IMG/VR virus record: IMGVR_UViG_3300050132_000038 | Location: 154,862 to 218,861 of that record | Strand: one strand, 5' to 3' | DNA: 64,000 bases | Shown here: piece after piece, positions 20,007-42,002 of the stretch | Layout of the letters: the number at the start of each line of letters is the position of its first letter | Position numbering within the stretch: position 1 is the stretch's first letter | Made by a program: the position numbers and the translations under genes | The notes under the pieces: generated by a model | What the model was told of the DNA's origin: nothing | The model's input: only the letters and a program-made list of their open reading frames with translations | The model's database searches: none

Positions 20007-20789
20007 ATGGGATTGAATAGTACCAACGATGCAGTAAAGCATGGCGAGGATTATGGTGACGGCTACTACTTAGGAACCGTTACTAACAATGTAGATCCTC
20101 TAGGTATCGGTCGAGTGCAGGCTAGTGTACCCGGCTTGTACAATCCGGCCAAGGGGCCTGTGCCTTGGGTTGGCCCTATTAAGGATTCCCCATTTGGTTT
20201 CGGAACAGGACCTAAAGGCCCCTACGGTGTGTACGGCAGCCCTTACGTAGGTTCCCAACTCATGGTGGAGTTGCAGAAAGGTGACGAGAACAACGCCCTG
20301 TACTCCCCTATACCAACTGCCCCTTCTGCTAACCCGGCGTTCGCTAATCCGTTGACCTGGGGCTTTCAAGATCCCTCGGGTAACATCCTCGTGGTCAACA
20401 TGGAGACCGGGTTATGGATGTGGACTCATAGCTCTGGGGATACCATTAGCTATGATGCAGCTGGTGACCGAGTAGTGGTGGTGAAGGGTAATGCCACGGA
20501 GAACATTACAGGGAACCTAAACATCACAGTGCAGGGTAATGCCTCCTTCGATGTCACCGGCACCGCTACGTACACTGCTGCAGAGCACCAGTTCATGGGT
20601 CCTGTTACTATGAGCGAAACACTGATGGTGGCCTCTAGCATTACAGACATGACGGGGTCTGGTAATACAGCTACCGTTATGGATATGCGTACATTCTTCG
20701 ACGAACATATGCACGACGTGGATAATGTCATGCCTGGCAACAGTACACTGACCACAACTACGCCTACCCCTCAGATTCCTAATGTGTAG
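20007..20789 (+). CDS. Baseplate central spike (gp5/gpV-like)
   Basis: OB-fold GTVTNNVDPLGIGRVQASVP, beta-helix repeats, C-terminal FDEHMHD metal-binding tip; GGAG RBS before ATG 20007. Confidence 0.8.
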   Translation: MGLNSTNDAVKHGEDYGDGYYLGTVTNNVDPLGIGRVQASVPGLYNPAKGPVPWVGPIKDSPFGFGTGPKGPYGVYGSPYVGSQLMVELQKGDENNALYSPIPTAPSANPAFANPLTWGFQDPSGNILVVNMETGLWMWTHSSGDTISYDAAGDRVVVVKGNATENITGNLNITVQGNASFDVTGTATYTAAEHQFMGPVTMSETLMVASSITDMTGSGNTATVMDMRTFFDEHMHDVDNVMPGNSTLTTTTPTPQIPNV

Positions 20790-20828
20790 TTCGCAAATTT
20801 CATAGTAACAAAACACTAGGAGTATATA

Positions 20829-21245
20829 GTGGCAGCCCTAACAAATTTTCAAATCTCTCTCCAAGGTGCGACCTGGATTGATGTAAACTCATTGTTTACG
20901 ATGAACACCTTACCTGATAGGTTACCCGATGCCTTGAGTCTACAGTACGGAAGTTTATATAATTTGTTCAACTGTAGCATCGGGGAAAGGAGTAGGACGT
21001 TCCAGCCCCAGTACGGTATGTATTGGAAAGAAGCACTTCAGGAGCCAATAGATAACATCACGGCCACCAAGATGCAGATCGGTATGATACAAGCACTAGC
21101 TAGATGGGAGCCTCGGATCACCGTGGACGTCGCTAACTCCTACGTGACTCCTGACCTTTCACTACCAGGCTATCAAGTGCAGGTTGCCTTCATGTTGAAC
21201 CTCACCTCACAGCGCCAAGCAGTTTCGTTTGCAGTCACTACTTAG
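20829..21245 (+). CDS. Baseplate wedge gp25-like protein
   Basis: GERSRTFQPQYG...LQEPID...LARWEPRITV. Confidence 0.8.
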   Translation: MAALTNFQISLQGATWIDVNSLFTMNTLPDRLPDALSLQYGSLYNLFNCSIGERSRTFQPQYGMYWKEALQEPIDNITATKMQIGMIQALARWEPRITVDVANSYVTPDLSLPGYQVQVAFMLNLTSQRQAVSFAVTT

Positions 21246-21275
21246 CAGAACAATATAGTCCACTGAGATTCTATT

Positions 21276-23084
21276 ATGGCGACATCGACCACAACTAGTG
21301 TAACCACTCCTGCCCAAGTACTTTCGTTAAGTCCACTAACCGCGGAAGTGACGGACTTTACCGGACAGTTCCATACGTACCTGCAGAACAACCCGACGTG
21401 GGTGGGCAACCTTACGACGCAGACTTCTGAGACCCTAGTTGAGCTGTTGTCTACGATTGGTACATACGCCCAAGCACGTATCACCCGTAAGTACGAGGAT
21501 GCGTTTGCGGAGACTGCTCAATCAGACGATGCTATTCTATCTATCACACAGATGCAGGGCCTCCGTATTACGCGGTACCTTCCTGCACAAGTATCAGTTA
21601 CACTGACCTCGCCTACTGAGATTTCATTCAACCCTCTAACTCAGTTCCAGGGGGCAGGCTCTTACTTCTTCAATCAGCAGCAGATAACGCTGTACGCTAA
21701 CACTCCCCTCACTGTTACTTTGTGCGAAGGTCAGATCTATGCCTATTCCATGAATGGTTTGGGCACAGAGAGACAAACCTATGTAGGGGTTCAGCCTGGG
21801 TTCGTTGTATCAGATCAGGATGTGCTAGTCCAGCTGAACGGAGTTACCATTCCTAAAGCTTATGGTGGCTTATGGAACTTCGACGGTCTTCCTGGCTACG
21901 CAGATTTAACAATGAGTGACGGTCGTCTCCTCCTGCAGTTCGGTAACTTAGGTGGCCTATCCACTATCGGACAGTTCGGTACTATTCCTAAAGCTACCGA
22001 TACCGTAGTGGTTAGTTATCCTGTAACTCAGGGCGCAACAGGTAACGGTATCGTCTCAATGGGTAACCCTGTTACTGTAGTCGGGTTCCCTATGGTAGCC
22101 GGAACATTCCTCGATAATCCTAGTGGCGGTTCTAACGCTAAACCAACTCTAGTCTACAAGAACGTGGCTTCGGGTGGATTCGGAACATATAGCTCAGGTG
22201 TTACCAAGTCACAGTACCTGAGCATACTCGCTACTTATCCAGGTATTGTTGATATTGTGACGCAGGCGCAGCGGGAGATTAACCCGATGGCGGTGCAGTG
22301 GATGAACGTTATCCGCATCTCTGCACTGACCAACAGCCCGTGGTCGCAAACACAGATTCAGGAGTTCCTGACGTACGCACAATCAGTAACGCAATACGCA
22401 CCGTACTTCATTTGGGTTGCACCGACAGCAGTTCCGCAGACTGTTAATGTTTCGGTGTACGTATTTAACACTGCAGTACCGTCACAGGTGCAATCAGCAG
22501 TGCAGACAGCGATGGTGAACCTATTCGCTATCAAGCCAGGTATCTTAGCCACTGACTTCTTCCTGTCGGACATTGAGAACGCGGTGTTCGCTGCTGCTCC
22601 TGGTTTGGTATCCTACGTAGTGGTGAATGAACCTACAGGGCCGATGATTGTAACTGCTCCTCAATCTCCAATGCCTACTTACACACTGGTTATGGACGGA
22701 GGAACATTGGGACCTCTGGTATACGCCTATGCCATATCGACCACTCTGATGAACGGTCAAGTTGGGACTCCCGTGAATTGGGTATTTCCGCAGGTTACAT
22801 CTATGGCAGATAACTACGCAGTTACCCTGACCTGGCCCCCAGTAGTGAATGCAGCTTCGTATCAGATCTGGGGGCGCTCTGCTGCTATGGTAGGACTACT
22901 TGGAACAGTAGAGGCTAATATGCCCTTAACCTTTACGGATACAGGGATGGTTATGCCTACTGGTAGCCCACCGAACGGCGTGGCGGATGTGCCCATACAA
23001 TTTAATTCACTGGCAAGTTTAACGGTGAACGTGTATCCGTCGACGAGGCAAGCTAAACTCGGTAATACATTGTTTGGGACTTGA
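21276..23084 (+). CDS. Baseplate wedge protein (gp6/J-like)
   Basis: LVELLSTIG...FAETAQ N-terminus; VTKSQY...YPGIVD pattern; follows gp25. Confidence 0.7.
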   Translation: MATSTTTSVTTPAQVLSLSPLTAEVTDFTGQFHTYLQNNPTWVGNLTTQTSETLVELLSTIGTYAQARITRKYEDAFAETAQSDDAILSITQMQGLRITRYLPAQVSVTLTSPTEISFNPLTQFQGAGSYFFNQQQITLYANTPLTVTLCEGQIYAYSMNGLGTERQTYVGVQPGFVVSDQDVLVQLNGVTIPKAYGGLWNFDGLPGYADLTMSDGRLLLQFGNLGGLSTIGQFGTIPKATDTVVVSYPVTQGATGNGIVSMGNPVTVVGFPMVAGTFLDNPSGGSNAKPTLVYKNVASGGFGTYSSGVTKSQYLSILATYPGIVDIVTQAQREINPMAVQWMNVIRISALTNSPWSQTQIQEFLTYAQSVTQYAPYFIWVAPTAVPQTVNVSVYVFNTAVPSQVQSAVQTAMVNLFAIKPGILATDFFLSDIENAVFAAAPGLVSYVVVNEPTGPMIVTAPQSPMPTYTLVMDGGTLGPLVYAYAISTTLMNGQVGTPVNWVFPQVTSMADNYAVTLTWPPVVNAASYQIWGRSAAMVGLLGTVEANMPLTFTDTGMVMPTGSPPNGVADVPIQFNSLASLTVNVYPSTRQAKLGNTLFGT

Positions 23085-23086
23085 AG

Positions 23087-24352
23087 ATGACGACACCACT
23101 TCCACCATCATTATACGAGTACACACTCTCACCTCCCACTACTGATAGCAAGGAGAATATTAGGCTAGGCTACAGGACCCCAAGATCCCTGTTGGCTCCT
23201 CCGTACATCTACCAAAATCCTTATTTTGTAGCCCTGCTGGATGCGGTAGACTATGTGTTCGAGACCACCGTCGATATTCCAACAGAAGTTTTAGGTGACC
23301 TACGTAAGATGTGGGTCACTAATCCGATGTTGGAAAACAATCAGATTGCTAACTCAGAGTTGATCCCCTTCGAGGCATGGTCGCAACCTGAGTGGGAGAT
23401 TTTGGTTAAGCAGGTCAATATGTTGGGCATGAAGTTGCAGTCAGCTTCGGTATTGACCAACGATAACTATCAGTCTATAGCTAGGTGGGTTGGTCAATAC
23501 TGGTTTGGTAAGGGGACCTCAGCATTCATTAATTTTATAAATTATTGCCTGAGTTCTAGCCTAGCTATAGAACAGCTGTGGACCGCAGACTACATTACGT
23601 TTTACCCTACAGGAGATTCCCGCATAGGAACTCCAATATGGGAGGGAGGCACTTGGTATCCTACTCCTAATGTAGCAATCACGGCTTCGGGTGGTCTACA
23701 ATCACTAGATGTGCAGACGTTGACCACATTCTTCTACGAGATTGCGAATTACAATATAGTGTTGCATGACATAGCACTAACGTTTGATATTCCAATCACT
23801 ACCACACCTACGGGTACCAATGCCCCTGTAGTAGCGTTAGGATTGAATATGGTTCAAGCGGTGCCGATCTCTAACTTGTACAGCTACGGTGCGAACTCTC
23901 CAGAGCTTACCATAACAGACGAAGTCCCCACCGCAGCGTGGACGACCAATCCAGGTAATATTGACCTTACTGGTGTGTATATGCTGGCAGCCCCTACGTC
24001 ATGGATTCAAGATACTATGGGGCGCGTCTTTCCGCTGTATGACGGCCCACAGCAAGTACCTGTACTAGAGACAGAACTCCCTACTACCCTATGTGGGCCC
24101 GTAGTAGCTGGAGCAACCTCTGTTATATATGGCCCTGTTATGTGGCAGGCTATTCCGACCGGCACGTATAGCGGCGGACGCCTTCCGGTGTTCAGCACAA
24201 TGCCTGTAGCAAAGACCGCAGACCTAGGAGAGGCCCCTACTAATCTAGTAGGGTTCCCCACATGCCTATTAGTTAATCCTACAGGCTTTGCTGAGTTTGT
24301 GCTAGGCTCCGGTTTATACAGTCCGTATTGGACAGGTTCCCCAGTACTCTAA
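23087..24352 (+). CDS. Baseplate wedge protein (gp7/gpI-like)
   Basis: Position; GQYWFGKGTSAFINFI pattern. Confidence 0.5.
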   Translation: MTTPLPPSLYEYTLSPPTTDSKENIRLGYRTPRSLLAPPYIYQNPYFVALLDAVDYVFETTVDIPTEVLGDLRKMWVTNPMLENNQIANSELIPFEAWSQPEWEILVKQVNMLGMKLQSASVLTNDNYQSIARWVGQYWFGKGTSAFINFINYCLSSSLAIEQLWTADYITFYPTGDSRIGTPIWEGGTWYPTPNVAITASGGLQSLDVQTLTTFFYEIANYNIVLHDIALTFDIPITTTPTGTNAPVVALGLNMVQAVPISNLYSYGANSPELTITDEVPTAAWTTNPGNIDLTGVYMLAAPTSWIQDTMGRVFPLYDGPQQVPVLETELPTTLCGPVVAGATSVIYGPVMWQAIPTGTYSGGRLPVFSTMPVAKTADLGEAPTNLVGFPTCLLVNPTGFAEFVLGSGLYSPYWTGSPVL

Positions 24353-24364
24353 AAGAGAAATCAG

Positions 24365-25480
24365 ATGGCATACGAACTTCCCACCTTCTATGATTCAATG
24401 GCCCAAGTAATCCGATCTATGGATACTGGAGATCAGATTCCCCCTATGCAGGTGCCCCTTAGTGCCACCATGGGAAACATTCTACAGATCCTTAGTGATG
24501 GCCTATACGTGGGGTCAACCTTAGCACTCCCTTCTGTGGTGTACATCAACAATGTAACTGGTGTAGACGCTCCCGGTAACGGCACTATGGCTATGCCATA
24601 CGCTACAATCGACTACGCTGTGTCTCAGTTGACAATGGCTTCGGTCAATCACCAGTTATCGACCTCCACCGTATTGGCATTGCAGGCAGGGCAGACCTTC
24701 CCTATAGTAAACGACATTAATCTGTATGGAGGAACCTTAACGTTTGCGTTCTACGGTGATATGAACTACGGTGCCTACTCTAGTCCGCCAGTAGGTACGG
24801 GTGCTATCCCTGCGATAATGACTGATCTCATGCGCCCGGTCCTTGTCCCTGCGGTGTCTCTGACGAGCACTAACCTTTGGCACATGTCTGGGGTTAATCT
24901 GTACGGAGGTAATATCTCACTGTTAGGTGTAGAGCTTGAGCTACCTATGGCACCCTCTGGTCCTTCTATCTCGTTGTACTCAGATGCAGCAGACTTTGTA
25001 CGTTCAATGAACTATGCAACGCCTGGGTACCTAGATTTGCAAGGGGCTATAGTAAACCAGCAGGATCCAACTGCCTTCTGGGGAGTTCTAGGCGTCCACG
25101 CTAGGTCTACCTCATTCTCCTTGATTCAATACGCATCGCAATTTCAGGTAGCAGGGATGCTTATCGACTTGGCTAATATGTCGACCAGTCCTGAGCTGAT
25201 GGCGCGTCCGTACTTCATTAAGTTCTACCCGGACTTTATTGGTAGCAATCAGCAGCAGGGTGTTCTGTATGATACAGCAATTACGGCAACGTCTGCCTCA
25301 GGTCTGCTTAAAGTTTTGTGGGCGGATACACAGAGCTATACAATTGAGAGCACTAAGACTAACCTCATGTCCTTCCCAATTGCTTATGATCTAGTGTACG
25401 GCCTCCGCAATTATTTTTATGGAATTACGTATGATTCACTAATGCGTCCAGTGAACGTAATCCCCAGTCGAACAATCTAA
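24365..25480 (+). CDS. Virion structural protein
   Basis: Low-charge composition; VYINNVTGVD...PYATI fibre-type motif. Confidence 0.5.
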   Translation: MAYELPTFYDSMAQVIRSMDTGDQIPPMQVPLSATMGNILQILSDGLYVGSTLALPSVVYINNVTGVDAPGNGTMAMPYATIDYAVSQLTMASVNHQLSTSTVLALQAGQTFPIVNDINLYGGTLTFAFYGDMNYGAYSSPPVGTGAIPAIMTDLMRPVLVPAVSLTSTNLWHMSGVNLYGGNISLLGVELELPMAPSGPSISLYSDAADFVRSMNYATPGYLDLQGAIVNQQDPTAFWGVLGVHARSTSFSLIQYASQFQVAGMLIDLANMSTSPELMARPYFIKFYPDFIGSNQQQGVLYDTAITATSASGLLKVLWADTQSYTIESTKTNLMSFPIAYDLVYGLRNYFYGITYDSLMRPVNVIPSRTI

Positions 25481-25496
25481 CCTTTGAGGTTCTTTC

Positions 25497-27281
25497 ATGA
25501 GTGGCACGCCCGTCTTCCAGATCACCTCAATTGGTTTAGCTACTGCTTCAATAGCTCTACCTACAGGCCCCTATATAAATATCACAAGCTTTGCCATCGG
25601 GAGTGGGTATGGTTATACCCCCTTACCTACTGATACCGGGCTGAGTGGTACTACGCTATTCTCCGGAACTCCCACCTCCTACCAGAACGTAGGTGGGGAT
25701 ACAATCGACATTCTGTGCTCGATACCTCCTAATGCCGGGCCTTTCCAGTTCGGGGAGATTGCACTGTATCTTCCTGGTAACGTAATGTTCGCCAAGGCGG
25801 TGTTCCCCACACCGCAGACCAAATTCAGTGCCCTAGGCTCTAACGTTGTTTCCTCGTATGAGCTCCACTGCTTGCTGACGTTGGCTCAGGGAACAGCGAT
25901 CTTCCAGGTCACTACGTCTAGTCCTACTACCCTGTTACAGGTGTTCAACTGGTCGGATATTTACCCACCAAGCTTGAGTGCTAATCCCACGGTACCCTTA
26001 CTACAGGTTATGGAGCTCTCGGAGTACGGTGATTCAACACTACTCTCTAACTCTAGTGCTGGGACGTGGACGATTGACAGCACGTATGGTCGATATTCTC
26101 AGTACAACGATACGCCGTACTTTCAAGTAGCTAATGCCTCGACCACTTGGATTGAAGTACTAGCAACTGAGTTACACCCACAGGATATAACAAGTGTTAG
26201 TGAACGGTTTGTTATTGAAACTTCCAGTGGGTACTTCCGTTCTGTAAATAGTGTAGTAGCGTCGGGTATGAACTACCGGTTTAACTTGAACGGAGCCCCA
26301 TTGCAAACTGTACCTATGGCCGGTTCCAACATAACGGTTTATCGTGATGACCTGGCAAAGGGTACTTCGTACTACTCACAGATTCTTGATCCACTGAACT
26401 ACGACATCACTAACTATGCCGCAGACACGGGTACAACTAATGCGTACGCAGCTACGTATAAGCAGAAGACTCCGGTACCACAAGTCGGGATGATTCGTTC
26501 TTTCCTAGTAGCCAATCCTAATACAGGTGCCTCTACTTTTGCACTAGACGGAGGGGCACCCTACCCGGTTTACGGTATGAACAATACGCCGTTACAGGGT
26601 GAAGAAATGAATGGTCGAGTTTGGGTAGAGTTCTCGGCTACTAGTAACTGGATTCTAATTAACAGTAGTATGGGTCCCCTACAGATTCCCAATGCACTGT
26701 ATAGTCAGCAAGCAGTTACCCTAGGGCAAGCGCAGGCGTTATCTCCTCCAGGGCAGATCATATATATGGCTGCGTCTACGCCCCCTACCGGGTTTCTCGT
26801 TGCCAACGGGTCTGCCGTGTCGCGTACTGCTTACGCTAATTTATTTGCTACTATCGGTACCTACTACGGTACTGGTGACGGAGCAACGACGTTTAACCTT
26901 CCTGACTTACGCGGTGTCGTCCCCCGAGGATGGGATGACGGTCGAGGACTAGACACTGGACGGGTCTTTGGTACGTACCAAGCTGACATGTACATGTCTC
27001 ACAATCACGGAGTTAATGACCCGACGCACAATCACTATGTTAATGACCCAGAACATACGCATACTATGACGATGGGCAGTCTTGCTCAGTCGGGTAGCTC
27101 TACCTACTGCTATGTACCCAGTAGTCTGTATGGGTTTCCTAATCCCCACACAGAAACTACTAGCCCTGCTGCTACGGGTATCTACCTTAGTGCTGCTTAC
27201 ACTGGTATTAGTATTCAATATTCGGGCGGTAATGAGACCCGAGGAAAGAATTTTTCACTGCTAGCCTGTGTGAAGTTCTAA
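25497..27281 (+). CDS. Tail fibre with collar domain
   Basis: PPGQII...PTGFLVANGSAVSRTAYANLFATIG...FNLPDLRG...GWDDGRG; HNH/HTH tip repeats. Confidence 0.85.
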   Translation: MSGTPVFQITSIGLATASIALPTGPYINITSFAIGSGYGYTPLPTDTGLSGTTLFSGTPTSYQNVGGDTIDILCSIPPNAGPFQFGEIALYLPGNVMFAKAVFPTPQTKFSALGSNVVSSYELHCLLTLAQGTAIFQVTTSSPTTLLQVFNWSDIYPPSLSANPTVPLLQVMELSEYGDSTLLSNSSAGTWTIDSTYGRYSQYNDTPYFQVANASTTWIEVLATELHPQDITSVSERFVIETSSGYFRSVNSVVASGMNYRFNLNGAPLQTVPMAGSNITVYRDDLAKGTSYYSQILDPLNYDITNYAADTGTTNAYAATYKQKTPVPQVGMIRSFLVANPNTGASTFALDGGAPYPVYGMNNTPLQGEEMNGRVWVEFSATSNWILINSSMGPLQIPNALYSQQAVTLGQAQALSPPGQIIYMAASTPPTGFLVANGSAVSRTAYANLFATIGTYYGTGDGATTFNLPDLRGVVPRGWDDGRGLDTGRVFGTYQADMYMSHNHGVNDPTHNHYVNDPEHTHTMTMGSLAQSGSSTYCYVPSSLYGFPNPHTETTSPAATGIYLSAAYTGISIQYSGGNETRGKNFSLLACVKF

Positions 27282-27303
27282 ACGAATATAAGGATAATAA
27301 ACA

Positions 27304-30443: not shown

Positions 30444-30452
30444 GAGTAATCC

Positions 30453-30842: not shown

Positions 30843-33800
30843 TTACCACCTCCTGCGAGTTAGTACACGGTAATATCCAGTGGTAATTACTGTACCAGTA
30901 CCTGCAACAGTTAGCCCTACGTAATCAGCATCTGTCCATATAGCTGCACTATTTCTGGTGGTAATACCTGCCTGCCAGCCTGTGAGCGCATACCAGTAGT
31001 CAATAGCATAGCGTTCGTTAGTACCTACTGCGTCATCCGCTATGCGAACTTCCGTAGCAAATGCAGTGTACCCTAAGTTATGATTTTTGTTGTACATAGT
31101 ATTAGTCGCTACCATAAACAACCCACTATCGTACTGGCCCTTCAACGCATAGCTAATAGCACTAGTAACTAGCGTGGTGCTAGTCATTGCCTCCCCTACA
31201 TACACCCTGTTCTTCTGAGTAAACATAGGATTAGCTAAGGCTGTTGTAGATGGTCCACTCACCTGAGTCATCGTCATGTTAGGAACTGAGAAGAAGTCAG
31301 ACGAGTAACCGACGGTTGCTATGTTGGGAGCGACAGTAGGAACCGCGTAGGTCATACCATTCGGATGCTGGCAATACGGTAGGAATTCAAACTTGTCGAT
31401 GTAGCCTGCAAACCACTGGGTATTGTTAGCTCCCGCGCCGACTGCTATGTATGAGACTGGACATACCTTTATAGTACTGGCGAATGTAAAATCGAGCAGC
31501 CCGTTAACGTATCCATAGTACTTACCGTCTACTGAGTCGTATACGAGCTCTGTAAATTGCCACATTCCGCTGTTAATGGTGTTAGTTCCCGGCGTACCAT
31601 TCACTATATCCCAGGTAGTCCCTGTAGATGATAAATAGTATTGAATCTTACTCTCGTACACTACGATTTGAGCCCCATAGTTTGTAGTCGTACTTGAGCT
31701 AGCATCAAAAATATCCTGAACAGTAGTAGTCGCGGCGTTAGTGGGCCAAATCCAACATCTTAAAGACCAACTACCGTTCCCCAAACTCTTGAAACCTGAG
31801 CTCAGTATATAGTTAGATGTACCATTCAAAGCAAAGTTAGTACCAGTACCTCCTAGTGCCCCTGTACCAAACTTATACTGGGTATTCTGAATAGTTGCAC
31901 CACCCATCGCAGTCCACATGTTCCCGAAGTCATCCAGGATCATCGTAGAGCCAGAGGTACCATTAAACTGCAACACTGATTGAGCACTTTGATTGTAGGA
32001 GTACCCGTACTGCACGGGAGCTAACGTAGAGGTCCACGTAACCGAAGTAGGGCTTGTGTAGTCAGCACTAATGAACGATGTGTTGCTCATAGGTAGTGTA
32101 ACTATGTTAGGCATATCCGCACTAATAGTTGCCCCATAGTTAGTAGCCCCTGCAGCAAATGAAATCACCATAGGCTGCATAGTGGCCGAAAGATTCACCG
32201 TCATCCCTGTACCCGGGGTCAACATCGAGGCATAACCTAAACTATTAGTCACCCCCATCTGCACGGTCTGTCTTGTGTAGCCTAGAGCTTGTGCTTGGGC
32301 TAATGGAACTAGCTGATTAGAGGAGGTAGCTACCGGACCCATCACTGGCCCAGTAAAGGTACCGCCAGTTATAGGTACCATATTAGCAACAGTAGAAGAC
32401 TGCTGACTAATGATCTTAATCTCAGCTCCTAGCATCGCTGGAACATTCAGCATCACCGAGGTGCCATTACTTGCCGTGTAGTCAGTACTCAGTAATAATG
32501 TTCCATTCTCAAACACCTGTACAGCACCCGGAGTGTACCCTACGTTGAACGTTGTCTGCCCCGCAGTTGCGATGAATTCATAAATCGAGATTGCACCAAT
32601 AGCAGAGAATGCGCTAAACGCTATCACTGATATTTCATCGTTCAAATTCAAACCAAACGGAAAGGTGATGTACGCACCTGTGGTCGCTACATAGTCCGTA
32701 GCAGGTAACTCTAGACCCATTCGCGTGACGATGATGTTGCCAGGAGTGTAACTCACATCAATCTGTGTCTGGCCTTGCGTGGTAGCGATAAAGTCATACT
32801 TCGTTAGCGTGTTAGCACCCGCAGATGACGCCAGAATAACGTTTGTACCATCTGAGTACGCAATGATCGACTTACCTTGCGGAGCCACCGCGGTCATACC
32901 TCCACCAGATATAGGTGTCAACTGGAACATAGTCAACACACCGTTACCTGTACCAAACAGCATTGCAGTTACAGTACCTAACCTGCCTTCTGCATCTAGG
33001 TAGGTGCCCGTCCAGGTCAACGTATTACCAGTAGTTGGTGGCAGTGCTAACGTTACCAACCCTCCTGTAGTTATCATGTAGTCAGTGATCGTTACTGCAG
33101 TCGCAAATGTCTCAATGTATGAGGTTGCAGCCATCCCGGTCTCGACTTGACCTCCCCACAGGTACGTGCTCCCTGTCAAAGCTGGGTTAGTACTCATGCA
33201 GGGATAGTACACGAAGTTGAATGCGCCGGACACCAACGGAGTTACCTGCAACGCAATACGGTACCAGCCATTCATCAACGGGTAGACCTGCCCCATAGAA
33301 ACCGTGGGTACTCCAGCAGTCCATGTTATCTGAGAACTAGTAATCGTATCCCCGGTATCATAACATTCAAACGTACCCGTAGTAGACGTCCCCTCTTTAA
33401 CATAGATGGATGCAGTGTATGTAGTACCGGCAACTCCGTTAAAGCTGGAGTTCGATATGTACGAAGGATTCGTAGTATCGTTATCTGTAACCATCCATGC
33501 GGTAGCAGTTCCATCTGGTGCAGTGAATCCCCCCGTGATGGTCGTGGATCCGGTTAGCATCCATGGTGCTGTGGATAACGCCTGAGACTCGAACAGCATG
33601 TTGGTCCTGGGCGTTTTATACAGTAGCTGATTACCATCCCAGTTGTTGAGATAGACCATTGAGGTCTCAACGGTGTAGACCGCCCCCGCCACACCTGTCT
33701 GCAATGTTAAGGAATACGCACCACTTGTATTATTGGCGAATACCCATATACCTGAGGTGTACGGTAGCTGCACCGTACTATTCCCCATAAGCGTACCAGT

Positions 33801-34127
33801 AAAGTTAATGATGCCTGAGTTGTACTGGGTAGGCGTGAGTACAGTAGAGATCGTGGTAATGGGTACTGTCTCTTCGCTATTTTTGAGATTCAAAGCTAGC
33901 TGCGCTATGTTCCCTGTGGTAACTTGTCGAAGACCCATCCCTAGGCTAGACGGTACAGTTTCCATACCCGACAATGGGCCTACTACAGGGGGCGCTGTAC
34001 CGTTAGCAATCTCATCTAGAAAATACTTAACGGTGTTTCCGTTGTACCCTACATCGGCAGCACCACGAGTAGGGTCCGTTTCGTTAGCAATACCAAGTAT
34101 ATCGGCAGGAGATAAGAGCCCTGTCAT
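30843..34127 (-). CDS. Tail fibre / receptor-binding protein
   Basis: RTNML..S carbohydrate-binding module, two ATxGQT-YTPG repeats, LamG/ConA-like domain. Confidence 0.75.
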   Translation of the reverse strand: MTGLLSPADILGIANETDPTRGAADVGYNGNTVKYFLDEIANGTAPPVVGPLSGMETVPSSLGMGLRQVTTGNIAQLALNLKNSEETVPITTISTVLTPTQYNSGIINFTGTLMGNSTVQLPYTSGIWVFANNTSGAYSLTLQTGVAGAVYTVETSMVYLNNWDGNQLLYKTPRTNMLFESQALSTAPWMLTGSTTITGGFTAPDGTATAWMVTDNDTTNPSYISNSSFNGVAGTTYTASIYVKEGTSTTGTFECYDTGDTITSSQITWTAGVPTVSMGQVYPLMNGWYRIALQVTPLVSGAFNFVYYPCMSTNPALTGSTYLWGGQVETGMAATSYIETFATAVTITDYMITTGGLVTLALPPTTGNTLTWTGTYLDAEGRLGTVTAMLFGTGNGVLTMFQLTPISGGGMTAVAPQGKSIIAYSDGTNVILASSAGANTLTKYDFIATTQGQTQIDVSYTPGNIIVTRMGLELPATDYVATTGAYITFPFGLNLNDEISVIAFSAFSAIGAISIYEFIATAGQTTFNVGYTPGAVQVFENGTLLLSTDYTASNGTSVMLNVPAMLGAEIKIISQQSSTVANMVPITGGTFTGPVMGPVATSSNQLVPLAQAQALGYTRQTVQMGVTNSLGYASMLTPGTGMTVNLSATMQPMVISFAAGATNYGATISADMPNIVTLPMSNTSFISADYTSPTSVTWTSTLAPVQYGYSYNQSAQSVLQFNGTSGSTMILDDFGNMWTAMGGATIQNTQYKFGTGALGGTGTNFALNGTSNYILSSGFKSLGNGSWSLRCWIWPTNAATTTVQDIFDASSSTTTNYGAQIVVYESKIQYYLSSTGTTWDIVNGTPGTNTINSGMWQFTELVYDSVDGKYYGYVNGLLDFTFASTIKVCPVSYIAVGAGANNTQWFAGYIDKFEFLPYCQHPNGMTYAVPTVAPNIATVGYSSDFFSVPNMTMTQVSGPSTTALANPMFTQKNRVYVGEAMTSTTLVTSAISYALKGQYDSGLFMVATNTMYNKNHNLGYTAFATEVRIADDAVGTNERYAIDYWYALTGWQAGITTRNSAAIWTDADYVGLTVAGTGTVITTGYYRVLTRRRW

Positions 34128-35220: not shown

Positions 35221-35228
35221 TGTAAATA
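35221..35228 (+). promoter_or_regulatory. TGTAAATA motif (candidate second promoter class)
   Basis: Recurs on + at 35221, 42060, 43066, 50046, 52490 and 58082, upstream of DNA-metabolism genes. Confidence 0.55.
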
Positions 35229-35249
35229 TGGGTTAACCCAGGAGTAATT

Positions 35250-35546: not shown

Positions 35547-35547
35547 T

Positions 35548-36438: not shown

Positions 36439-36458
36439 GCTGAAGGCCGTACTTAGTA

Positions 36459-37157
36459 CTAGGCTGAAGGCCACACAATAGCTTGAACAGCGGCTACTGC
36501 ATCTGCTTCTGTAGTAGTCACTGTTACAGCCTGCACCTGCTGTTGTAGGTTGCTATTCTGCTGAAGTATAGCTCCGATCTTGTTGTTACCGTCTATGCCT
36601 ACCTGCCGCATCTGGGATGCAGTATGCGCTGCCCATGTCCAGGCTCCGGTACTATCCTGGCACCAGAAAGAGACAGTCCACACATTCCAAATCACTGAAC
36701 CATCATCGACCGGCGCTACACTCCAGTTCTGAGGGCTAGTGCTGGAGGTTCCCGGAGTAGTACAAATGAAGCCTTGCCCGTCCATAGTTATAATCTGCCC
36801 TTCAGGAACTACTGCACCGGCAGCCCAAGCAGGGCTAGTCAAAGCAATGGTAGCTGCGGAAGCTCGGCTATTCATGTTAAGCTGGTCTAACTGCTGGGCT
36901 GGGTAAGTATGGACTGTCCCTAAGGCTGACGAAGTGAATCCTTTGTAGATTTCATTCGAGGTAGCTGCATTAAGGATACCTGCCTGGGTAGCCTGCGCCT
37001 GAGCCAGAGTAGGTCCCGGTACCGGGGTAACTACGTTACCCGCAGCTACCCATTTAAGATAAGCTGCGTAATCCGAATTGCCCGGGCAATTCGGAATAGT
37101 TGCTCCATCCGAACGAAGAATAGAAGTCGAGTTTGCCACGAGTGTGTAAGTGTACAT
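36459..37157 (-). CDS. Fibre assembly chaperone (DUF4376-like)
   Basis: IPNCPGNSDYAAYLKWVAAGN and GFTSSALGTVHTYP...DQLN. Confidence 0.65.
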   Translation of the reverse strand: MYTYTLVANSTSILRSDGATIPNCPGNSDYAAYLKWVAAGNVVTPVPGPTLAQAQATQAGILNAATSNEIYKGFTSSALGTVHTYPAQQLDQLNMNSRASAATIALTSPAWAAGAVVPEGQIITMDGQGFICTTPGTSSTSPQNWSVAPVDDGSVIWNVWTVSFWCQDSTGAWTWAAHTASQMRQVGIDGNNKIGAILQQNSNLQQQVQAVTVTTTEADAVAAVQAIVWPSA

Positions 37158-37173
37158 GGTGTTCCTTTGTTAA

Positions 37174-38259: not shown

Positions 38260-38300
38260 TTGTACTCCTTACTTAAACGTAGTTCGCTAAACGTAGTTCG

Positions 38301-41300
38301 CTACGCTGGTTCAAAGATTTCATAAGCAATCATCGAGGTATCGGTTGCGCTAGAACTAGTTATGGTGAATGACGAACCGATCGTTCTGCCTGATACTCGT
38401 ACCCACCCTGGTGTACCTCCATCCATCTGCCCAGTCAAGAATATACGACTGTTAGCAGTAACTGACGTATTGGACACCGTAATAGTGCCAGCTACTAGAG
38501 TCACCACACCCTGCTTGCCGTTAGTAACCTCCGACGCCCTGAACCCCATCTGGGCTGCACTGTACATAGTTGCTCTAGCACTTCCAGTGACCTGCAGCTG
38601 TTCTGCTGTAATCATAGGGACCGCATTACCTAACTGCATAATACCCGCAGCATAGTTAGCAGCCGTACCCATCATGTACAAATTCCAGTTACCCGGTACA
38701 GATGGCAAATTCCCGACGAACCCCATGTTATGAACAGCACCTATCAGCGTTGCATCTGCGTAGTACCCGTATTGGCTAGTTACTGTTGAACCTGTACCAA
38801 ACGTTCCCTGGGTGGCCGAGTAGTGATACAGTGTAGGTAACGTAAACGTTGATGCTGCAGTAGCGCCCATCGTTTTATAGTACGTAGCACTTGTTGTTGC
38901 TGTAGAAGGAACCATCGTCTCCGCAATGGCAGACACAGGCATCGCCGTTATACTGCTCTGCATACCGAACGTAGTTATATCAGTAGCGGTTAACGTTGTA
39001 GCCATTACCGGACCATTAAATGATCCGGCGTATATAGCACCACTAACACCTAAGCCGCCTGTAATAACCTCACTACCAGTCGTCATAGACGTTGAAGGGA
39101 CGTTAGCTTCAAGCATTAACACACCCATGCTATTAAAGCGCCCTGCCTCCGTCTTCGTCACCGACCCACTAGGCGTCACCATGAATGCCACAGCAGTTGG
39201 GTTAGAGGTATCGGTGAATGCACCCTCCGCTACTATATGCACGCTACCAGTTACTAGCGGTTGATACTCAGTAGTACCAAACCCAATACCCCCGAAAGCC
39301 GCGATCACATCTGTGCTCTGTACTGCAGTAGGTATAGCAGCTGTTCCTCTAGCTCCTCGACCTATATAACCAGACGTAGGGTTCATCGTATTATACGAGT
39401 CCAACACCATCTTAGTATTTGTGTCATCAGCTTCGGTAGCTCTAAGCATTGTCCCTACTGGTGCTGGCATCTGGCTGCCGATCGGGGTAACGTTAGCACT
39501 AACAGAAGAAGTCATACCAGCATTAACTGCCCCACTGACACCAAGACCTCCTGTTACAACACCACTACCAGTGAGAACCGAAGTAGAAGGAAGATTAGCC
39601 TCTAACATCAAGACACCCATAGAATTTAACCGCATCTTCTCGGTTCTTACTATGGAGCCTGTAGGAGTTACCTGCCAGGCTATAGCAGTAGCCATAGAGG
39701 TATCGGTGAAGTTCTCCTCAGCCACAAACTGCATAACAGCAGTGCTACCCATCTGGAACATAGTAGTACCATAACCATGTCCGGCTACCAGCCCAATAAT
39801 ATCCGTGTTCTGGATTGCCATAGGCGCTGCCGCAGTGCCCCGTGCTCCACGTAAAGAAACACCGGCCATAGGATTACCCGTGCTCACATAGGCGTCCACA
39901 TCTATCTTCGTTTCTACGCCGTCTGCATTGACCAGCCGAAACACAGTACCCGTAGTAGGTACAGGTAGCATAGACGCTTGGGTGAAGTTAAGATTCACTG
40001 AAGATAGCGATCCTACATTCAGTTCGCCTTCAACACCAAGTCCACCTACTACTGTTACTGCTCCAGTGGTAGTCGAGGTAGATGGAGTGTTATTGCTAAC
40101 GTTCAACGTGGTAAACTTTCCAGCTAGGAACCCGGCCTCTAGCTGACTGAGGAAGTATCCTACCGTGGTGAGCCCTAAGTCCATTGAATTATACCCAACT
40201 AGGGTAGCCCCTGTTGATGAAGCCAACATAGACTTCGGCACAGCATTACTAATACTGAAGATCGTAAACGACGAAATGGTTAGCACTGCACCGATCTGCA
40301 CCTGAGCAATTAACGCTGCATTAATAAGCGTAATGTTCAAGCTGTCAGTAGCCGTATAGTCTACGTTCGGGACTAATCTCAATCCCGCAATGAACACCTC
40401 TATGTAACCAGGAGTATAGCCAGTAGTAAGGAACGTAGTCTGATTCATCATGGTAGCCGTAATCGACTGCTCCATGTGAGTCATCGTGGTAGCTACTTCG
40501 TTCCAAAGGCTCCAGGTGTTCCCTGTTAATCCCCGGAAGTACATAGTCGAGGAAGTGGACACCCGCTGAATAACATCTCCAGGTCCCACCATAGTCAGGG
40601 GTACAACTTCTAACGTGGCTTCCGTTGCCACACCCAAAGGCAAATTCAGGATAGTCCCCACCGTCGAACTGGTTATGTAGTACAACCCAGTTGTCATCAT
40701 CGTGTTCAAGTCTGTATTAGCAGACAAGGCCACCGGATTAACTAAACCTGTGTACGTAGGGATATAAACTTCCACGTCACCTGTGCTAGGATCCGGATAT
40801 TGCATGTTCACCGACTTAACCGGATTGAACGCTAGATCAATCGTACCATCCGTCGCAATGGTAAGGTGCATTTCCGACGTAGCTGGTGCTTTTACTCCAC
40901 CCAACGTAGTGGTAGTAGCAGGCATTAGCGTGTATGGTGCCGGGTAATTCAGTAGGTCGTAATAGTTACCGGTAATGGCAACCTTAGCGATATCGTAGAT
41001 GTCTGAGGCCGTCAGCATCACATCGCCCATCTGCCCATTAACCATCTGCACAGGTGCTTTGGTTTCGTCTACACTAAGTAATCCGGTTGAATCTACCAGA
41101 AGACCGTAGCCCACCATTATAGCGCCCAGCTTCGTCGTGGTAGCCGGGGGCAGATTCATCACCTGGGTTGACAGAATCTGACGACCGAAGACCAGGAATT
41201 CATCACCTACCGCAGGCAACATTGCTAAGGGAGTAGCGAAACCTAGGGTAACTGTGTCTCCGCTGATGACTGCCGTCTCCACGTAGCGGACAATACCGTA

Positions 41301-42002
41301 CAGAGCACCAGTACTAAACTGCAACAGCACTTCACCGAAGTACGCAGGACTCATACCCATTACGTACTGCGACATTGCAATCGTTACGGATTGACTGTCC
41401 ACCGCAGTGATGGTGGCGGTGGTCTGCTGGGCAAAGTCGTAGGCATCAAAGTTCCATAGCCCATTCGTATCTGTATAAGCAAAGAATGCGGACTGATAGC
41501 TAGATGCACCCTGTACAATGTAGGCGTTAGGAACAGCACCGGCAGACGGGGGTAATTGATCTGCGGTTTGCAACACCCCCATGCGGAAGCTATTGCTACT
41601 CTGGTTCAAATTCAACCAGATGTTATAGTTCGTTCCTACTACCGAGACATAAACATCTATAACGATAGAGTTACCTGGGTCAACCGAGGTCAAAGCTAGC
41701 TTCTCGATAAGCTCGGATGAAGTACCCAGAGCAAACAGAGTAGTCCCTACATATAATCCGATCTCACCGAATTGGAAAGGACCAACTGGGTAGTCGATGA
41801 AGCACGACCACTTTACGATGTTAGCGTTAACGGCTAGGGGTAGGCTAGGAGTTCCAGCATACACTTCCGTACCGTGCAGCATCGTGTCGGTAGGCTCTGG
41901 AGTGTAGTTATAATCAGAACCCAACTCGAATGAGGTGAGTGTAATTGGGCCGGTAGCATTCTGTAAAAGCATCGCCCCGGCTGTCGTAAGTTGTATGAGC
42001 AC
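38301..42002 (-). CDS. Long tail fibre
   Basis: N-terminus resembles that of 25497 (GPFQFGEIGLY); two RGARGTAA repeats; C-terminal TVSNTSVTANSRIFLT domain. Confidence 0.8.
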   Translation of the reverse strand: MLIQLTTAGAMLLQNATGPITLTSFELGSDYNYTPEPTDTMLHGTEVYAGTPSLPLAVNANIVKWSCFIDYPVGPFQFGEIGLYVGTTLFALGTSSELIEKLALTSVDPGNSIVIDVYVSVVGTNYNIWLNLNQSSNSFRMGVLQTADQLPPSAGAVPNAYIVQGASSYQSAFFAYTDTNGLWNFDAYDFAQQTTATITAVDSQSVTIAMSQYVMGMSPAYFGEVLLQFSTGALYGIVRYVETAVISGDTVTLGFATPLAMLPAVGDEFLVFGRQILSTQVMNLPPATTTKLGAIMVGYGLLVDSTGLLSVDETKAPVQMVNGQMGDVMLTASDIYDIAKVAITGNYYDLLNYPAPYTLMPATTTTLGGVKAPATSEMHLTIATDGTIDLAFNPVKSVNMQYPDPSTGDVEVYIPTYTGLVNPVALSANTDLNTMMTTGLYYITSSTVGTILNLPLGVATEATLEVVPLTMVGPGDVIQRVSTSSTMYFRGLTGNTWSLWNEVATTMTHMEQSITATMMNQTTFLTTGYTPGYIEVFIAGLRLVPNVDYTATDSLNITLINAALIAQVQIGAVLTISSFTIFSISNAVPKSMLASSTGATLVGYNSMDLGLTTVGYFLSQLEAGFLAGKFTTLNVSNNTPSTSTTTGAVTVVGGLGVEGELNVGSLSSVNLNFTQASMLPVPTTGTVFRLVNADGVETKIDVDAYVSTGNPMAGVSLRGARGTAAAPMAIQNTDIIGLVAGHGYGTTMFQMGSTAVMQFVAEENFTDTSMATAIAWQVTPTGSIVRTEKMRLNSMGVLMLEANLPSTSVLTGSGVVTGGLGVSGAVNAGMTSSVSANVTPIGSQMPAPVGTMLRATEADDTNTKMVLDSYNTMNPTSGYIGRGARGTAAIPTAVQSTDVIAAFGGIGFGTTEYQPLVTGSVHIVAEGAFTDTSNPTAVAFMVTPSGSVTKTEAGRFNSMGVLMLEANVPSTSMTTGSEVITGGLGVSGAIYAGSFNGPVMATTLTATDITTFGMQSSITAMPVSAIAETMVPSTATTSATYYKTMGATAASTFTLPTLYHYSATQGTFGTGSTVTSQYGYYADATLIGAVHNMGFVGNLPSVPGNWNLYMMGTAANYAAGIMQLGNAVPMITAEQLQVTGSARATMYSAAQMGFRASEVTNGKQGVVTLVAGTITVSNTSVTANSRIFLTGQMDGGTPGWVRVSGRTIGSSFTITSSSATDTSMIAYEIFEPA

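What the first reader, a model, noticed from the sequence alone, without database searches (positions are those of the whole stretch)
20007..42002. Virion-exterior proteins are unusually Met-rich and Lys-poor
My hand count for the 1233-aa fibre (38301..42002) is about 59 Met and 15 Lys. Met occupies positions where familiar fibre motifs have small polar residues (VQMVNGQMGDVMLT, ATMMNQTTF, TDTSM). Internal paralogues show T/M swaps: GMYSV vs GTYSV, GTIMYNG vs GAITYNG, PMAIQ vs PTAVQ. Replication proteins in the same window are Lys-rich. Inference: low charge suggests an acid-stable particle and an acidophilic host. The Met excess could be selected (oxidant or metal sink) or arise from ACG-to-ATG transition bias.
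Basis: partly seen in the sequence, partly recalled or inferred. Interest (0 to 1): 0.6.

Follow-up and report, generated by a model that had tools for sequence, protein, structure and literature searches.

The report
Methionine-rich tail fibres in a jumbo phage
A small clade of uncultivated phiRSL1-like jumbo phages has three to four times the usual methionine in its tail fibres and outer baseplate proteins, apparently through selection rather than mutation bias, while the low lysine that suggested an acid-loving host is normal for this protein family.

Summary
The window is the last 64 kb of a complete 218.9-kb uncultivated jumbo myophage (GC 48%) related to Ralstonia phiRSL1, Burkholderia BcepSauron and BCSR5, and Achromobacter Motura.

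- **Counts:** The fibre at 38301-42002 has 59 Met and 15 Lys in 1233 aa.
- **Lys and charge:** these are ordinary. Lys is 1.2% and charged residues are 9.1%. Medians in the two sets of homologous fibres (196 proteins in all) are 1.5% Lys and 9.4% / 8.7% charged. Relatives that infect neutrophiles look the same, so the acidophile inference has no support.
- **Met:** the excess is real. The fibre has 4.7% against a homologue median of about 1.0-1.1% and a maximum of 3.1%. The 1094-aa tail protein, a 371-aa tailspike-like beta-helix protein and three baseplate proteins are also enriched. The tube, other inner tail proteins and the replication proteins are not.
- **Clade trait:** sister contigs L105, L055 and L107 share the trait to varying degrees. 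The window and L105 have similar Met counts at mostly different sites, so gain is parallel and continuing.
- **Type of site:** gains fall mostly at variable T/A/S/P/Q/G positions.
- **Mutational causes rejected:** few ACG precursors, no GC-Met correlation, no out-of-frame ATG excess, and no gain in non-virion genes.

Best reading: composition-level selection on the adsorption apparatus. Its function is unproven.

The parts
38301..42002 (-). Long tail fibre, 1233 aa: 58 internal Met (4.7%), Lys 1.2%, charged 9.1%. It is the most Met-rich of 196 homologous fibres.
   Evidence: tblastn gives 51-52% identity over residues 1-503 to the phiRSL1 ORF171 and BcepSauron gp288 tail fibres.
40473..42002 (-). 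Conserved N-terminal shaft of the fibre (residues 1-510). It has about 22 internal Met against about 6-8 in most homologues. Met replaces invariant Ser (320), Ile (296) and Thr (325), and Pro (360) and Gly (400) that most relatives conserve.
   Evidence: Alignments.
39033..40112 (-). Two internal repeats of about 170 aa (residues 631-815 and 816-990), 55% identical. They carry 10 and 9 Met, of which only 2 are at shared positions.
38313..38522 (-). C-terminal K1-lyase_C domain of the fibre (residues 1161-1230).
   Evidence: Pfam PF24146, E = 1.7e-26. It is 58-69% identical to the C-termini of Streptomyces and Ralstonia phage tailspikes.
37174..38259 (-). 361-aa fibre-associated protein, paralogue of 29361-30443 (56% identity). 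Lys 0.3%, Met 2.2% (not enriched).
   Evidence: phrog_4492 tail fiber.
36459..37157 (-). 232-aa tail fibre protein. Low charge, Met 1.3% (not enriched).
   Evidence: phrog_1348.
30843..34127 (-). 1094-aa tail protein. Met is 3.5% against a homologue median of 1.04% and a maximum of 2.50%. Its C-terminal half resembles LamG-like proteins annotated in Herbaspirillum genomes.
   Evidence: phrog_5939.
29361..30443 (-). 360-aa fibre-associated protein, paralogue of 37174-38259. Lys 0.6%, Met 2.2%.
   Evidence: phrog_4492.
28394..28819 (-). 141-aa low-charge protein (charged 5.7%, Thr 15.6%, Met 2.9%). It has 5 Met against 2-4 in three sister orthologues.
25497..27281 (+). 594-aa tail-collar fibre protein. 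Low charge, Met 2.2% (little or no enrichment).
   Evidence: Pfam Collar PF07484, E = 3.6e-21; phrog_523.
24365..25480 (+). 371-aa tailspike-like right-handed beta-helix protein of the baseplate periphery. Met is 4.9%, higher than in all 31 orthologues (median 1.9%, max 3.3%).
   Evidence: AlphaFold2 model with pLDDT 84.6. VIA-align Z = 14.3, rmsd 2.8 A, 186 residues aligned to CBA120 TSP1..
23081..24352 (+). 423-aa tail protein. Low charge, not Met-enriched (higher than the orthologue in 8 of 36 comparisons).
   Evidence: phrog_14098.
21276..23084 (+). 602-aa baseplate wedge subunit (gp6/J-like). Met is higher than in 39 of 41 orthologues.
   Evidence: phrog_219.
20829..21245 (+). 138-aa gp25-like baseplate wedge subunit. 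Met is higher than in 40 of 45 orthologues.
   Evidence: phrog_261.
19956..20789 (+). 277-aa baseplate hub/spike protein with an OB domain. Met is higher than in 35 of 42 orthologues.
   Evidence: Pfam Phage_base_V (weak); phrog_9992 and phrog_430.
10540..11505 (+). Contrast: tail tube protein. Low charge but not Met-enriched (higher than the orthologue in 3 of 13 comparisons).
   Evidence: phrog_45.
52624..54168 (+). Contrast: DEAD/ResIII helicase. Lys 10.7%, Met 1.6% against 2.8-3.8% in orthologues.

Best explanation
Two separate things are present. (1) Lys-poverty and low total charge are the normal composition of fibre and baseplate proteins in the phiRSL1-like jumbo myophages and of the shuffled fibre modules they share with other phages. 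These are T/S/G/N-rich beta-structured proteins, and the composition says nothing about pH. (2) On top of that, a small clade (this phage plus the metagenomic sister contigs L105/L106, L055 and L107) has been replacing small or polar uncharged residues (T, A, S, P, Q, G) with Met. The replacements fall at variable, probably exposed positions in proteins of the distal tail: the long fibre, the 1094-aa tail protein, a tailspike-like beta-helix protein, and the hub and wedge proteins. Specific sites are not conserved and sister lineages gain Met at different positions, so the force acts on composition rather than on particular residues. It is absent from replication genes, from inner tail proteins and from out-of-frame ATG, so it is selection on the protein class and not a mutation bias (inferred). 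The most likely function, held at only about 0.3, is to make the already uncharged surface of the adsorption apparatus more hydrophobic and pliable for contact with the host envelope. This fits the parallel rise of Val and Leu and the fall of Arg, Asp and Lys in the same proteins. A sacrificial oxidant sink is the main alternative.
For: Fibre Met is 4.71% against a median of about 1.0-1.1% and a maximum of 3.13% in 196 homologues; Lys and charge are near the medians. The 1094-aa protein has 3.48% against a maximum of 2.50% in 29 homologues, and more Met than the homologue in 29 of 29 aligned comparisons. Baseplate proteins exceed their orthologues in 31/31, 39/41, 40/45 and 35/42 related loci. 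Pooled, they have 2.9-4.2% Met against 1.1-2.7% in all 41 loci. The sister contig L105 has a fibre with 3.6% Met and a homologue of the 371-aa protein with 4.3%. L107 has a gp25-like protein with 5.8%. Over the first 640 fibre residues the window and L105 have 25 and 24 Met with only 9 shared. The two internal repeats share 2 of 10 and 9 Met. Of 57 window-specific gains, 72% lie at T/A/S/P/Q/G sites and 18% at L/I/V/F sites, and site conservation is 0.47 against 0.63 overall. The neutral expectation for Met is 1.7%, or 2.3% if charged residues, His and Cys are forbidden. In-frame ATG o/e in virion genes is 1.38 against 0.54-0.92 in relatives, and out-of-frame ATG is not raised. Lineage-private Met per 1000 columns is 15.5 in the window's virion proteins against 6.0-12.9 in relatives, and 7.1 in its other proteins against 9.5-16.2. 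Net composition shift in the enriched baseplate proteins: M +1.8, V +1.6, L +1.1, I -1.3, R -1.1, D -1.0, K -0.6 percentage points.
Against: No structure-based exposure measurement was possible, so exposure is inferred from residue type and conservation only. Enrichment is heterogeneous: 23081-24352 is not enriched, and the tail-collar fibre and the 360/361-aa proteins show little or none. Within the clade, L107's homologue of the 371-aa protein has only 2.7% Met. The sheath and a 508-aa low-charge protein outside the window also show a modest rise, so restriction to the adsorption apparatus is not clean. Comparisons among metagenomic loci are not phylogenetically independent. No habitat, host or experimental data bear on function.
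Confidence: 0.6

Rival explanations
1. Mutational origin. CpG deamination or a GC-to-AT transition bias converts Thr ACG (and Ala GCG, Val GTG) into ATG, and this shows mainly in fast-evolving fibre genes.
For: The genome is 6-10 GC points below its four named relatives. CpG o/e is 0.87. ACG falls from 36-47% of Thr codons in relatives to 22-23% here. M/T is the fourth most frequent exchange between the 360/361-aa paralogues, at 6 sites.
Against: At the window's Met sites only 2 of 85 homologue codons are ACG. Against close sisters the figure is 12 of 179, and 80% of sister codons differ from ATG at 2-3 bases. Thr is no more frequent at gain sites than in the background (13% against 11%). ACG usage is the same in virion and non-virion genes. 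Met does not correlate with GC across 41 related loci with GC 0.37-0.59 (rho = 0.12, p = 0.45). The close relative L056 has GC 0.469 and a fibre with 1.6% Met. Out-of-frame ATG is not enriched, and non-virion orthologues have the lowest rate of private Met gain.
Confidence: 0.05
2. Acid adaptation. The charge-poor exterior reflects an acid-stable virion and an acidophilic host, and Met-richness is part of that syndrome.
For: Acid-stable proteins are known to have reduced surface charge (general knowledge). The window's virion proteins are somewhat lower in K, R and D than those of the four named relatives (K 1.3-1.4% against 1.9-3.8%). For 17615-18511, charge is below that of all 30 orthologues (6.7% against a minimum of 9.3%).
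Against: The fibre's Lys and charge are near the medians of 196 homologues. phiRSL1, which infects Ralstonia solanacearum, is nearly as charge-poor. The nearest bacterial matches to the receptor-binding region are in Herbaspirillum genomes. Met-richness is not a recognised marker of acidophiles (my knowledge). Close relatives with equally low charge, such as L056, lack the Met excess.
Confidence: 0.08
3. Oxidant sink. Exposed Met residues are selected as sacrificial scavengers of H2O2, HOCl or singlet oxygen, protecting the adsorption apparatus.
For: Gains lie at variable polar positions, without site conservation, as a purely compositional role predicts. Cys and His are lower than in orthologues (-0.32 and -0.18 points). 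The concept of surface Met as an antioxidant is established for cellular proteins (general knowledge).
Against: The genome encodes no MsrA or MsrB, and outside the cell there is no recycling, so each Met scavenges only once. The capsid-side proteins and the sheath, which have the largest exposed area, are only modestly enriched. Val and Leu rise as well, which an antioxidant role does not predict. No literature precedent for phage fibres was found.
Confidence: 0.2
4. Neutral drift under relaxed constraint. Fast-evolving fibre proteins wander in composition, and one clade happens to be Met-rich.
For: Enrichment is heterogeneous among proteins and among sister contigs. Gain sites are poorly conserved.
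Against: 4.7% is two to three times the neutral equilibrium of 1.7-2.3%. At least six proteins shift in the same direction. Sister lineages gained in parallel. Gains outnumber losses 76 to 11 in virion proteins.
Confidence: 0.12
5. Metal binding. The Met residues form Cu(I)/Ag(I) 'Mets motifs', as in CopC, PcoC or CusF.
For: Local strings such as MVNGQMGDVM and MTHMEQSITATMM look motif-like.
Against: Met-Met spacings of 1-7 residues do not differ from shuffles of the same protein (P = 0.5-0.95). His is depleted. Met positions are not conserved between sisters or between the internal repeats.
Confidence: 0.03
6. Artefact or recoding: an assembly error, or ATG read as something other than Met.
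For: None was found.
Against: The ORFs are intact and homologous along their whole length. The trait recurs in four independent metagenomic contigs. The genome's only tRNA is Gln-UUG. Many different residues are replaced by Met.
Confidence: 0.02

Closest known systems
Long tail fibre of Ralstonia phage phiRSL1 (ORF171) and tail fibre of Burkholderia phage BcepSauron (gp288)
   Same: The N-terminal ~500 aa are 51-52% identical. The gene neighbourhood is syntenic. Lys is similarly low (2.0-2.2%), charge is similarly low (8.4-10.9%) and Thr is similarly high.
   Different: Met is 1.4-1.6% against 4.7% here. The C-terminal receptor-binding parts differ: here there are two ~170-aa repeats plus a K1-lyase_C domain.
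Metagenomic sister contigs L105/L106 (JGI 3300064019 and 3300063443), L055 (JGI 3300063407) and L107 (SRR29078250)
   Same: Proteins are 60-81% identical and the fibre cassettes are syntenic. The sisters share the Met-rich trait: fibre 3.1-3.6%, homologue of the 371-aa protein 4.3%, gp25-like protein 5.8%.
   Different: The window is the most extreme member. Most Met positions are private to each lineage.
Phage T4 long tail fibre proteins gp34-gp37
   Same: The fibres are poorer in Lys than the replication proteins of the same phage, so the direction of the contrast is general.
   Different: T4 fibres have Lys 3.8-5.0%, charged residues 16-20% and Met 0.9-1.5%. The phiRSL1-like family has about half that charge, and this clade has three to five times the Met.
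CBA120 TSP1-type tailspikes and pectate-lyase-like right-handed beta-helices
   Same: The fold of the 371-aa protein at 24365-25480 (Z = 14.3, rmsd 2.8 A, 186 residues aligned).
   Different: Sequence identity is only 13-14%. No catalytic residues were examined, and the protein is much shorter than typical tailspikes.
Surface methionine as a sacrificial antioxidant (concept from cellular proteins) and methionine-rich pliable binding surfaces (calmodulin, SRP54 M domain)
   Same: In both cases the enrichment is of exposed Met, and the Met residues need not be conserved site by site. This comparison rests on my own knowledge and was not tested here.
   Different: Those cases are intracellular and, for the antioxidant role, rely on Msr recycling. 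Here the proteins are extracellular virion parts and the phage has no Msr genes.

Membership tests
phiRSL1-like jumbo myophages (relatives of Mieseafarmvirus, Sarumanvirus and Moturavirus) | Shared core gene set and synteny with the named members | tested here: met
   112 genes have reciprocal best hits in at least one of the four relatives. The block of replication genes, fibre and lysis genes is syntenic.
phiRSL1-like jumbo myophages (relatives of Mieseafarmvirus, Sarumanvirus and Moturavirus) | Genome of about 220-265 kb with a contractile tail module | tested here: met
   218,861 bp, complete, with direct terminal repeats. Sheath, tube and baseplate genes are present.
phiRSL1-like jumbo myophages (relatives of Mieseafarmvirus, Sarumanvirus and Moturavirus) | Burkholderiales host | tested here: inconclusive
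   The only clue is 45-50% identity of the C-terminal half of the 1094-aa protein to loci in two Herbaspirillum genomes and one MAG scaffold.
Acid-adapted (acidophile-associated) extracellular proteins | Surface charge reduced relative to homologues from neutrophiles | tested here: not met
   The fibre's Lys (1.22%) and charged residues (9.1%) are near the medians of 196 homologues, and phiRSL1 has 8.4% charged. Some baseplate proteins are modestly below their orthologues.
Acid-adapted (acidophile-associated) extracellular proteins | Origin in an acidic habitat or an acidophilic host | not testable with these tools
No paper mentions the sample identifiers.
Transition-driven (CpG deamination) amino-acid drift | Precursor codons one transition from ATG (ACG, GTG), with an equal effect in all gene classes and reading frames | tested here: not met
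   ACG accounts for 2 of 85 and 12 of 179 precursor codons. 80% of sister codons differ from ATG at 2-3 bases. There is no excess of out-of-frame ATG. Non-virion genes show the lowest gain.
Cu(I)/Ag(I)-binding Mets-motif proteins | Clustered MxM, MxxM or MxxxM motifs | tested here: not met
   Met spacings do not differ from shuffles of the same protein.
Sacrificial surface-Met antioxidant proteins | Met solvent-exposed and dispensable for the fold | tested here: inconclusive
   Proxy evidence only: 72% of gains are at T/A/S/P/Q/G sites, with conservation 0.47 against 0.63. No model coordinates were available to measure exposure.
Sacrificial surface-Met antioxidant proteins | Recycling by methionine sulfoxide reductase | tested here: not met
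   PF01625 and PF01641 are absent from the complete genome.
Right-handed parallel beta-helix tailspikes (for 24365-25480) | Beta-helix fold | tested here: met
   pLDDT 84.6. Z = 14.3 to CBA120 TSP1 and Z = 9-12 to PL6 lyases and pectin methylesterases.
Right-handed parallel beta-helix tailspikes (for 24365-25480) | Glycan-degrading active site | not tested
   Catalytic residues were not examined. There is no Pfam or PHROG hit.

The most novel reading that the evidence does not exclude
A phage clade is under sustained positive selection to coat its adsorption apparatus (fibres, tailspike-like protein, outer baseplate) with exposed methionine. This would be a previously undescribed compositional adaptation of virions. 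It could act as a one-shot oxidant shield, as a redox-sensitive switch in which Met oxidation tunes adsorption, or as a pliable hydrophobic contact surface for a particular host envelope.
Probability: 0.3. Interest if true: 0.65.

Novelty: new variant of a known kind. Interest (0 to 1): 0.42.

Why it matters
The proteins are ordinary tail fibres and baseplate parts from a known jumbo-phage group. The unusual part is a three- to four-fold Met enrichment that is specific to one protein class and one clade and has been gained in parallel. I found no description of this in the literature searched. If it is selected, it would show that virion surface composition, and not only receptor-binding sites, can adapt to habitat or host. 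That would offer a compact system for testing what exposed methionine does outside a cell. It matters for reading environmental adaptation from viral metagenomes and for engineering more robust phage particles. The negative result is also useful: low Lys and low charge in fibre proteins are a family property and should not be taken as a marker of acidophily.

Tried and rejected
- **Sample metadata:** A full-text search for the sister contigs' sample identifiers found nothing.
- **Kinship search:** The genome search 'relatives' is not available for a virus record.
- **Host scan:** the first genome-contig scan, with a single sequence, found nothing. The alignment-based repeat found only three loci.
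- **Internal repeats:** self-BLAST of the fibre missed them. A direct pairwise alignment recovered them.
- **Literature:** searches for Met-rich fibres, Met oxidation of phage capsids and Lys depletion in fibres gave no relevant precedent.
- **Recoding of ATG:** considered and dropped. The only tRNA is Gln-UUG, and many different residues are replaced. No alternative genetic code was used anywhere.
- **Repeat amplification as the source of Met:** rejected, because Met is spread evenly and not shared between the repeats.
- **Horizontal acquisition of a Met-rich module:** rejected, because the vertically conserved N-terminal shaft and several neighbouring genes are enriched too.
- **Low GC as the cause:** rejected.
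- **Not run:** the exhaustive protein search (search of protein representatives), because the word-based searches gave ample homologues, and complex prediction, because no binding claim is made.
- **Not possible:** solvent exposure of the Met sites, because model coordinates are not returned by the tools.

Full report
**What the window is.** The 64-kb window is the 3' end (bases 154,862-218,861) of a single-contig genome of 218,861 bp with GC 48.3%. IMG/VR classes it as complete, with direct terminal repeats. Protein and DNA searches place it among the phiRSL1-like jumbo myophages. The fibre's first ~500 residues are 44-52% identical to tail fibres of Ralstonia phage phiRSL1, Burkholderia phages BcepSauron, BcepSaruman and BCSR5, and Achromobacter phage Motura, and the replication genes match the same phages. 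112 genes have reciprocal best hits in at least one of four fully fetched relatives.

The finding's coordinates cover the baseplate and fibre module:
- hub/spike protein, 19956-20789
- gp25-like wedge, 20829-21245
- gp6-like wedge, 21276-23084
- a tail protein, 23081-24352
- a 371-aa protein, 24365-25480
- a tail-collar fibre, 25497-27281
- on the minus strand, two cassettes, each a large fibre followed by a ~360-aa protein: 30843-34127 with 29361-30443, and 38301-42002 with 37174-38259 and then 36459-37157.

The 371-aa protein had no family hit. It folds confidently (pLDDT 84.6) as a right-handed beta-helix, with Z = 14.3 (rmsd 2.8 A, 186 residues aligned) to the phage CBA120 tailspike TSP1. 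It is therefore a peripheral, tailspike-like part.

**Checking the observation.** Every quoted motif and T/M swap is present. Pooled over the 13 low-charge virion ORFs between 19956 and 42002, Met is 3.32% and Lys 1.25%. In the window's other ORFs Met is 2.14% and Lys 8.01%. The proteome is bimodal. Thirty-three proteins of at least 100 aa have under 13.5% charged residues. They are depleted in K, R, D, E, H and C, not in Lys alone, and enriched in T, G, N, S and Q.

**Lys-poverty is ordinary.**
- The homologous fibres of phiRSL1 (K 2.0%, charged 8.4%), BcepSauron (2.2%, 10.9%) and Motura (1.8%, 12.1%) look the same.
- Among 85 homologues of the N-terminal part and 111 of the C-terminal part, median Lys is 1.48-1.49% and median charged residues 9.4% and 8.7%. 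The window's 1.22% and 9.1% lie near those medians.
- T4 shows the same direction of contrast, with fibres at K 3.8-5.0% and replication proteins at 7-11%. It is less extreme.
- In aligned columns the window's virion proteins are somewhat poorer in K, R and D than the four named relatives (K 1.3-1.4% against 1.9-3.8%). phiRSL1, a phage of a neutrophilic plant pathogen, is nearly as low.
- The only host clue is 45-50% identity between the C-terminal half of the 1094-aa protein and loci in two Herbaspirillum genomes.
- The composition therefore gives no support for an acidophilic host. Habitat metadata could not be obtained.

**Met-richness is real and unusual.**
- The fibre's 4.71% internal Met exceeds all 196 homologues, whose median is about 1.0-1.1% and maximum 3.13%. 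Binomial P is 1.5e-19 against the family median and 2.5e-8 against this genome's own 2.1%.
- Met is spread evenly from about residue 200 to the C-terminus.
- The 1094-aa protein has 3.48% against a median of 1.04% and a maximum of 2.50% in 29 homologues. It has more Met than the homologue in all 29 aligned comparisons.
- Across 46 related IMG/VR loci, the window exceeds its orthologue in aligned columns in 31/31 (371-aa protein; 5.0% against a median of 1.9%), 39/41 (gp6-like), 40/45 (gp25-like) and 35/42 (hub) comparisons.
- There is no excess in the tube (3/13), the 11529 and 12818 proteins (2/17 and 0/12) or 23081-24352 (8/36).
- Replication orthologues have equal or lower Met than their relatives.
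- Genome-wide and per gene, the low-charge class is not significantly richer in Met (p = 0.17).
- The accurate statement is therefore that a subset of distal-tail proteins is Met-rich. It is not true of every exterior protein.

**It is a clade trait with continuing, parallel gain.** Four metagenomic contigs are close sisters, with 60-81% protein identity and syntenic fibre cassettes.
- L105 has a fibre with 3.6% Met and a homologue of the 371-aa protein with 4.3%.
- L055's fibre has 3.1%.
- L107's gp25-like and gp6-like proteins have 5.8% and 3.0%.
- Another close relative, L056/L057 (exonuclease 80% identical, GC 0.47), has a fibre with only 1.6%.
- The window and L055 share derived Met at four sites where the other relatives mostly carry Pro, Gly or other non-Met residues.
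- Over the first 640 fibre residues the window and L105 carry 25 and 24 Met with only 9 shared, and 14 are private to the window.
- The fibre's two internal ~170-aa repeats carry 10 and 9 Met with 2 shared.
- A high Met level is therefore maintained while individual sites turn over.

**Where the Met residues go.** Of 57 window-specific gains in the fibre shaft and four baseplate proteins, 72% lie where relatives mostly have T, A, S, P, Q or G. Only 18% lie at L, I, V or F positions, which is where Met usually exchanges. Gain sites are less conserved than average (0.47 against 0.63). Some gains replace residues that all or most relatives share in fibre motifs: Ser-320 and Ile-296 are invariant in the ten relatives aligned, Thr-325 is present in nine of them, and Pro-360 and Gly-400 in seven each. 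By proxy only, it suggests that the gains are on the surface.

**Mutational explanations fail.**
- At the window's Met sites only 2 of 85 codons in distant homologues are ACG, and only 12 of 179 in close sisters.
- 80% of sister codons differ from ATG at 2-3 bases, and Thr is no more frequent there than in the background.
- ACG makes up 22-23% of Thr codons in both protein classes. CpG o/e is 0.87 and TpG o/e 1.05.
- Met does not follow GC across 41 related loci with GC 0.37-0.59 (rho = 0.12, p = 0.45).
- In-frame ATG o/e in virion genes is 1.38 against 0.54-0.92 in relatives, while out-of-frame ATG is not raised.
- Lineage-private Met per 1000 aligned columns is highest in the window for virion proteins (15.5 against 6.0-12.9) and lowest for other proteins (7.1 against 9.5-16.2).
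- The neutral expectation from base composition is 1.7% Met, or 2.3% if K, R, D, E, H and C are excluded.
- Recoding is unsupported. The genome's only tRNA is Gln-UUG, and many different residues are replaced.

**What it most likely is.** The evidence fits selection acting on the composition of distal-tail proteins in one small clade. In the enriched baseplate proteins the net shift against orthologues, in percentage points, is M +1.8, V +1.6, L +1.1, P +0.9, I -1.3, R -1.1, D -1.0 and K -0.6. That is a move toward a less charged, more hydrophobic surface. My preferred functional reading, at about 0.3, is a more hydrophobic and pliable contact surface for the host envelope.

The oxidant-sink reading, at about 0.2, fits the lack of site conservation and the lower Cys and His. 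It is weakened in three ways. The genome has no Msr genes, and outside the cell each Met can scavenge only once. The sheath and a 508-aa low-charge protein show only a modest rise. Val and Leu rise as well. Metal binding is disfavoured because Met spacing is random. Neutral drift is disfavoured by the level reached, the common direction in at least six proteins and the parallel gains.

**Limits.**
- Exposure was not measured on coordinates.
- The metagenomic loci are not phylogenetically independent, and no tree-based test was run.
- Habitat and host remain unknown.
- No experiment bears on function.

Noticed in passing
window 8615-9721, 16551-17612, 54165-55415 (+): Three paralogous LEM-3-like GIY-YIG genes, probably homing endonucleases (one also has NUMOD3). 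They are inserted in the tail and replication modules and are very Lys-rich (12%). They inflate the Lys contrast between 'replication' and virion genes.
   Followed up: partly
window 29361-34127 and 36459-42002 (-): The fibre cassette is duplicated. Each large fibre (1094 aa, 1233 aa) is followed by a ~360-aa protein, and the two ~360-aa proteins are 56% identical paralogues. Sister contig L105 carries three tandem copies of about 340 aa after its 947-aa protein.
   Followed up: partly
window 38313-38522 (-): The fibre ends in a K1-lyase_C domain that is 58-69% identical to the C-termini of tailspikes from Streptomyces phages and Ralstonia podophages. This is a module shared across phages of different bacterial phyla.
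   Followed up: no
window 30843-32300 (-); loci L109, L110, L111: The C-terminal half of the 1094-aa tail protein is 45-50% identical to LamG-like proteins in two Herbaspirillum genomes and in one scaffold binned as Mucilaginibacter. This is the only clue to the host.
   Followed up: partly
window 48807-50037 and 52164-52586 (+): Three low-charge, Thr-rich proteins of unknown function (charged 9-13%) sit inside the replication module. Two of them are conserved in phiRSL1 (ORF158 and ORF159). They may be unrecognised virion or envelope-facing proteins.
   Followed up: no
genome G000:C1:7038-8975 (outside the window): The tail sheath has only 4 Lys in 645 aa, against 11-26 in the four named relatives, and 9.0% charged residues against 17.2% in BCSR5. 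This is the clearest case of extra charge loss in this lineage.
   Followed up: partly
genome G000:C1:64348-64422: A 219-kb jumbo phage carries a single tRNA gene, tRNA-Gln (UUG).
   Followed up: no
locus L105:9315-9974: The sister phage's endolysin homologue has no Lys at all, against 7 in the window's endolysin (34143-34802). This suggests that Lys avoidance there extends beyond virion proteins.
   Followed up: no
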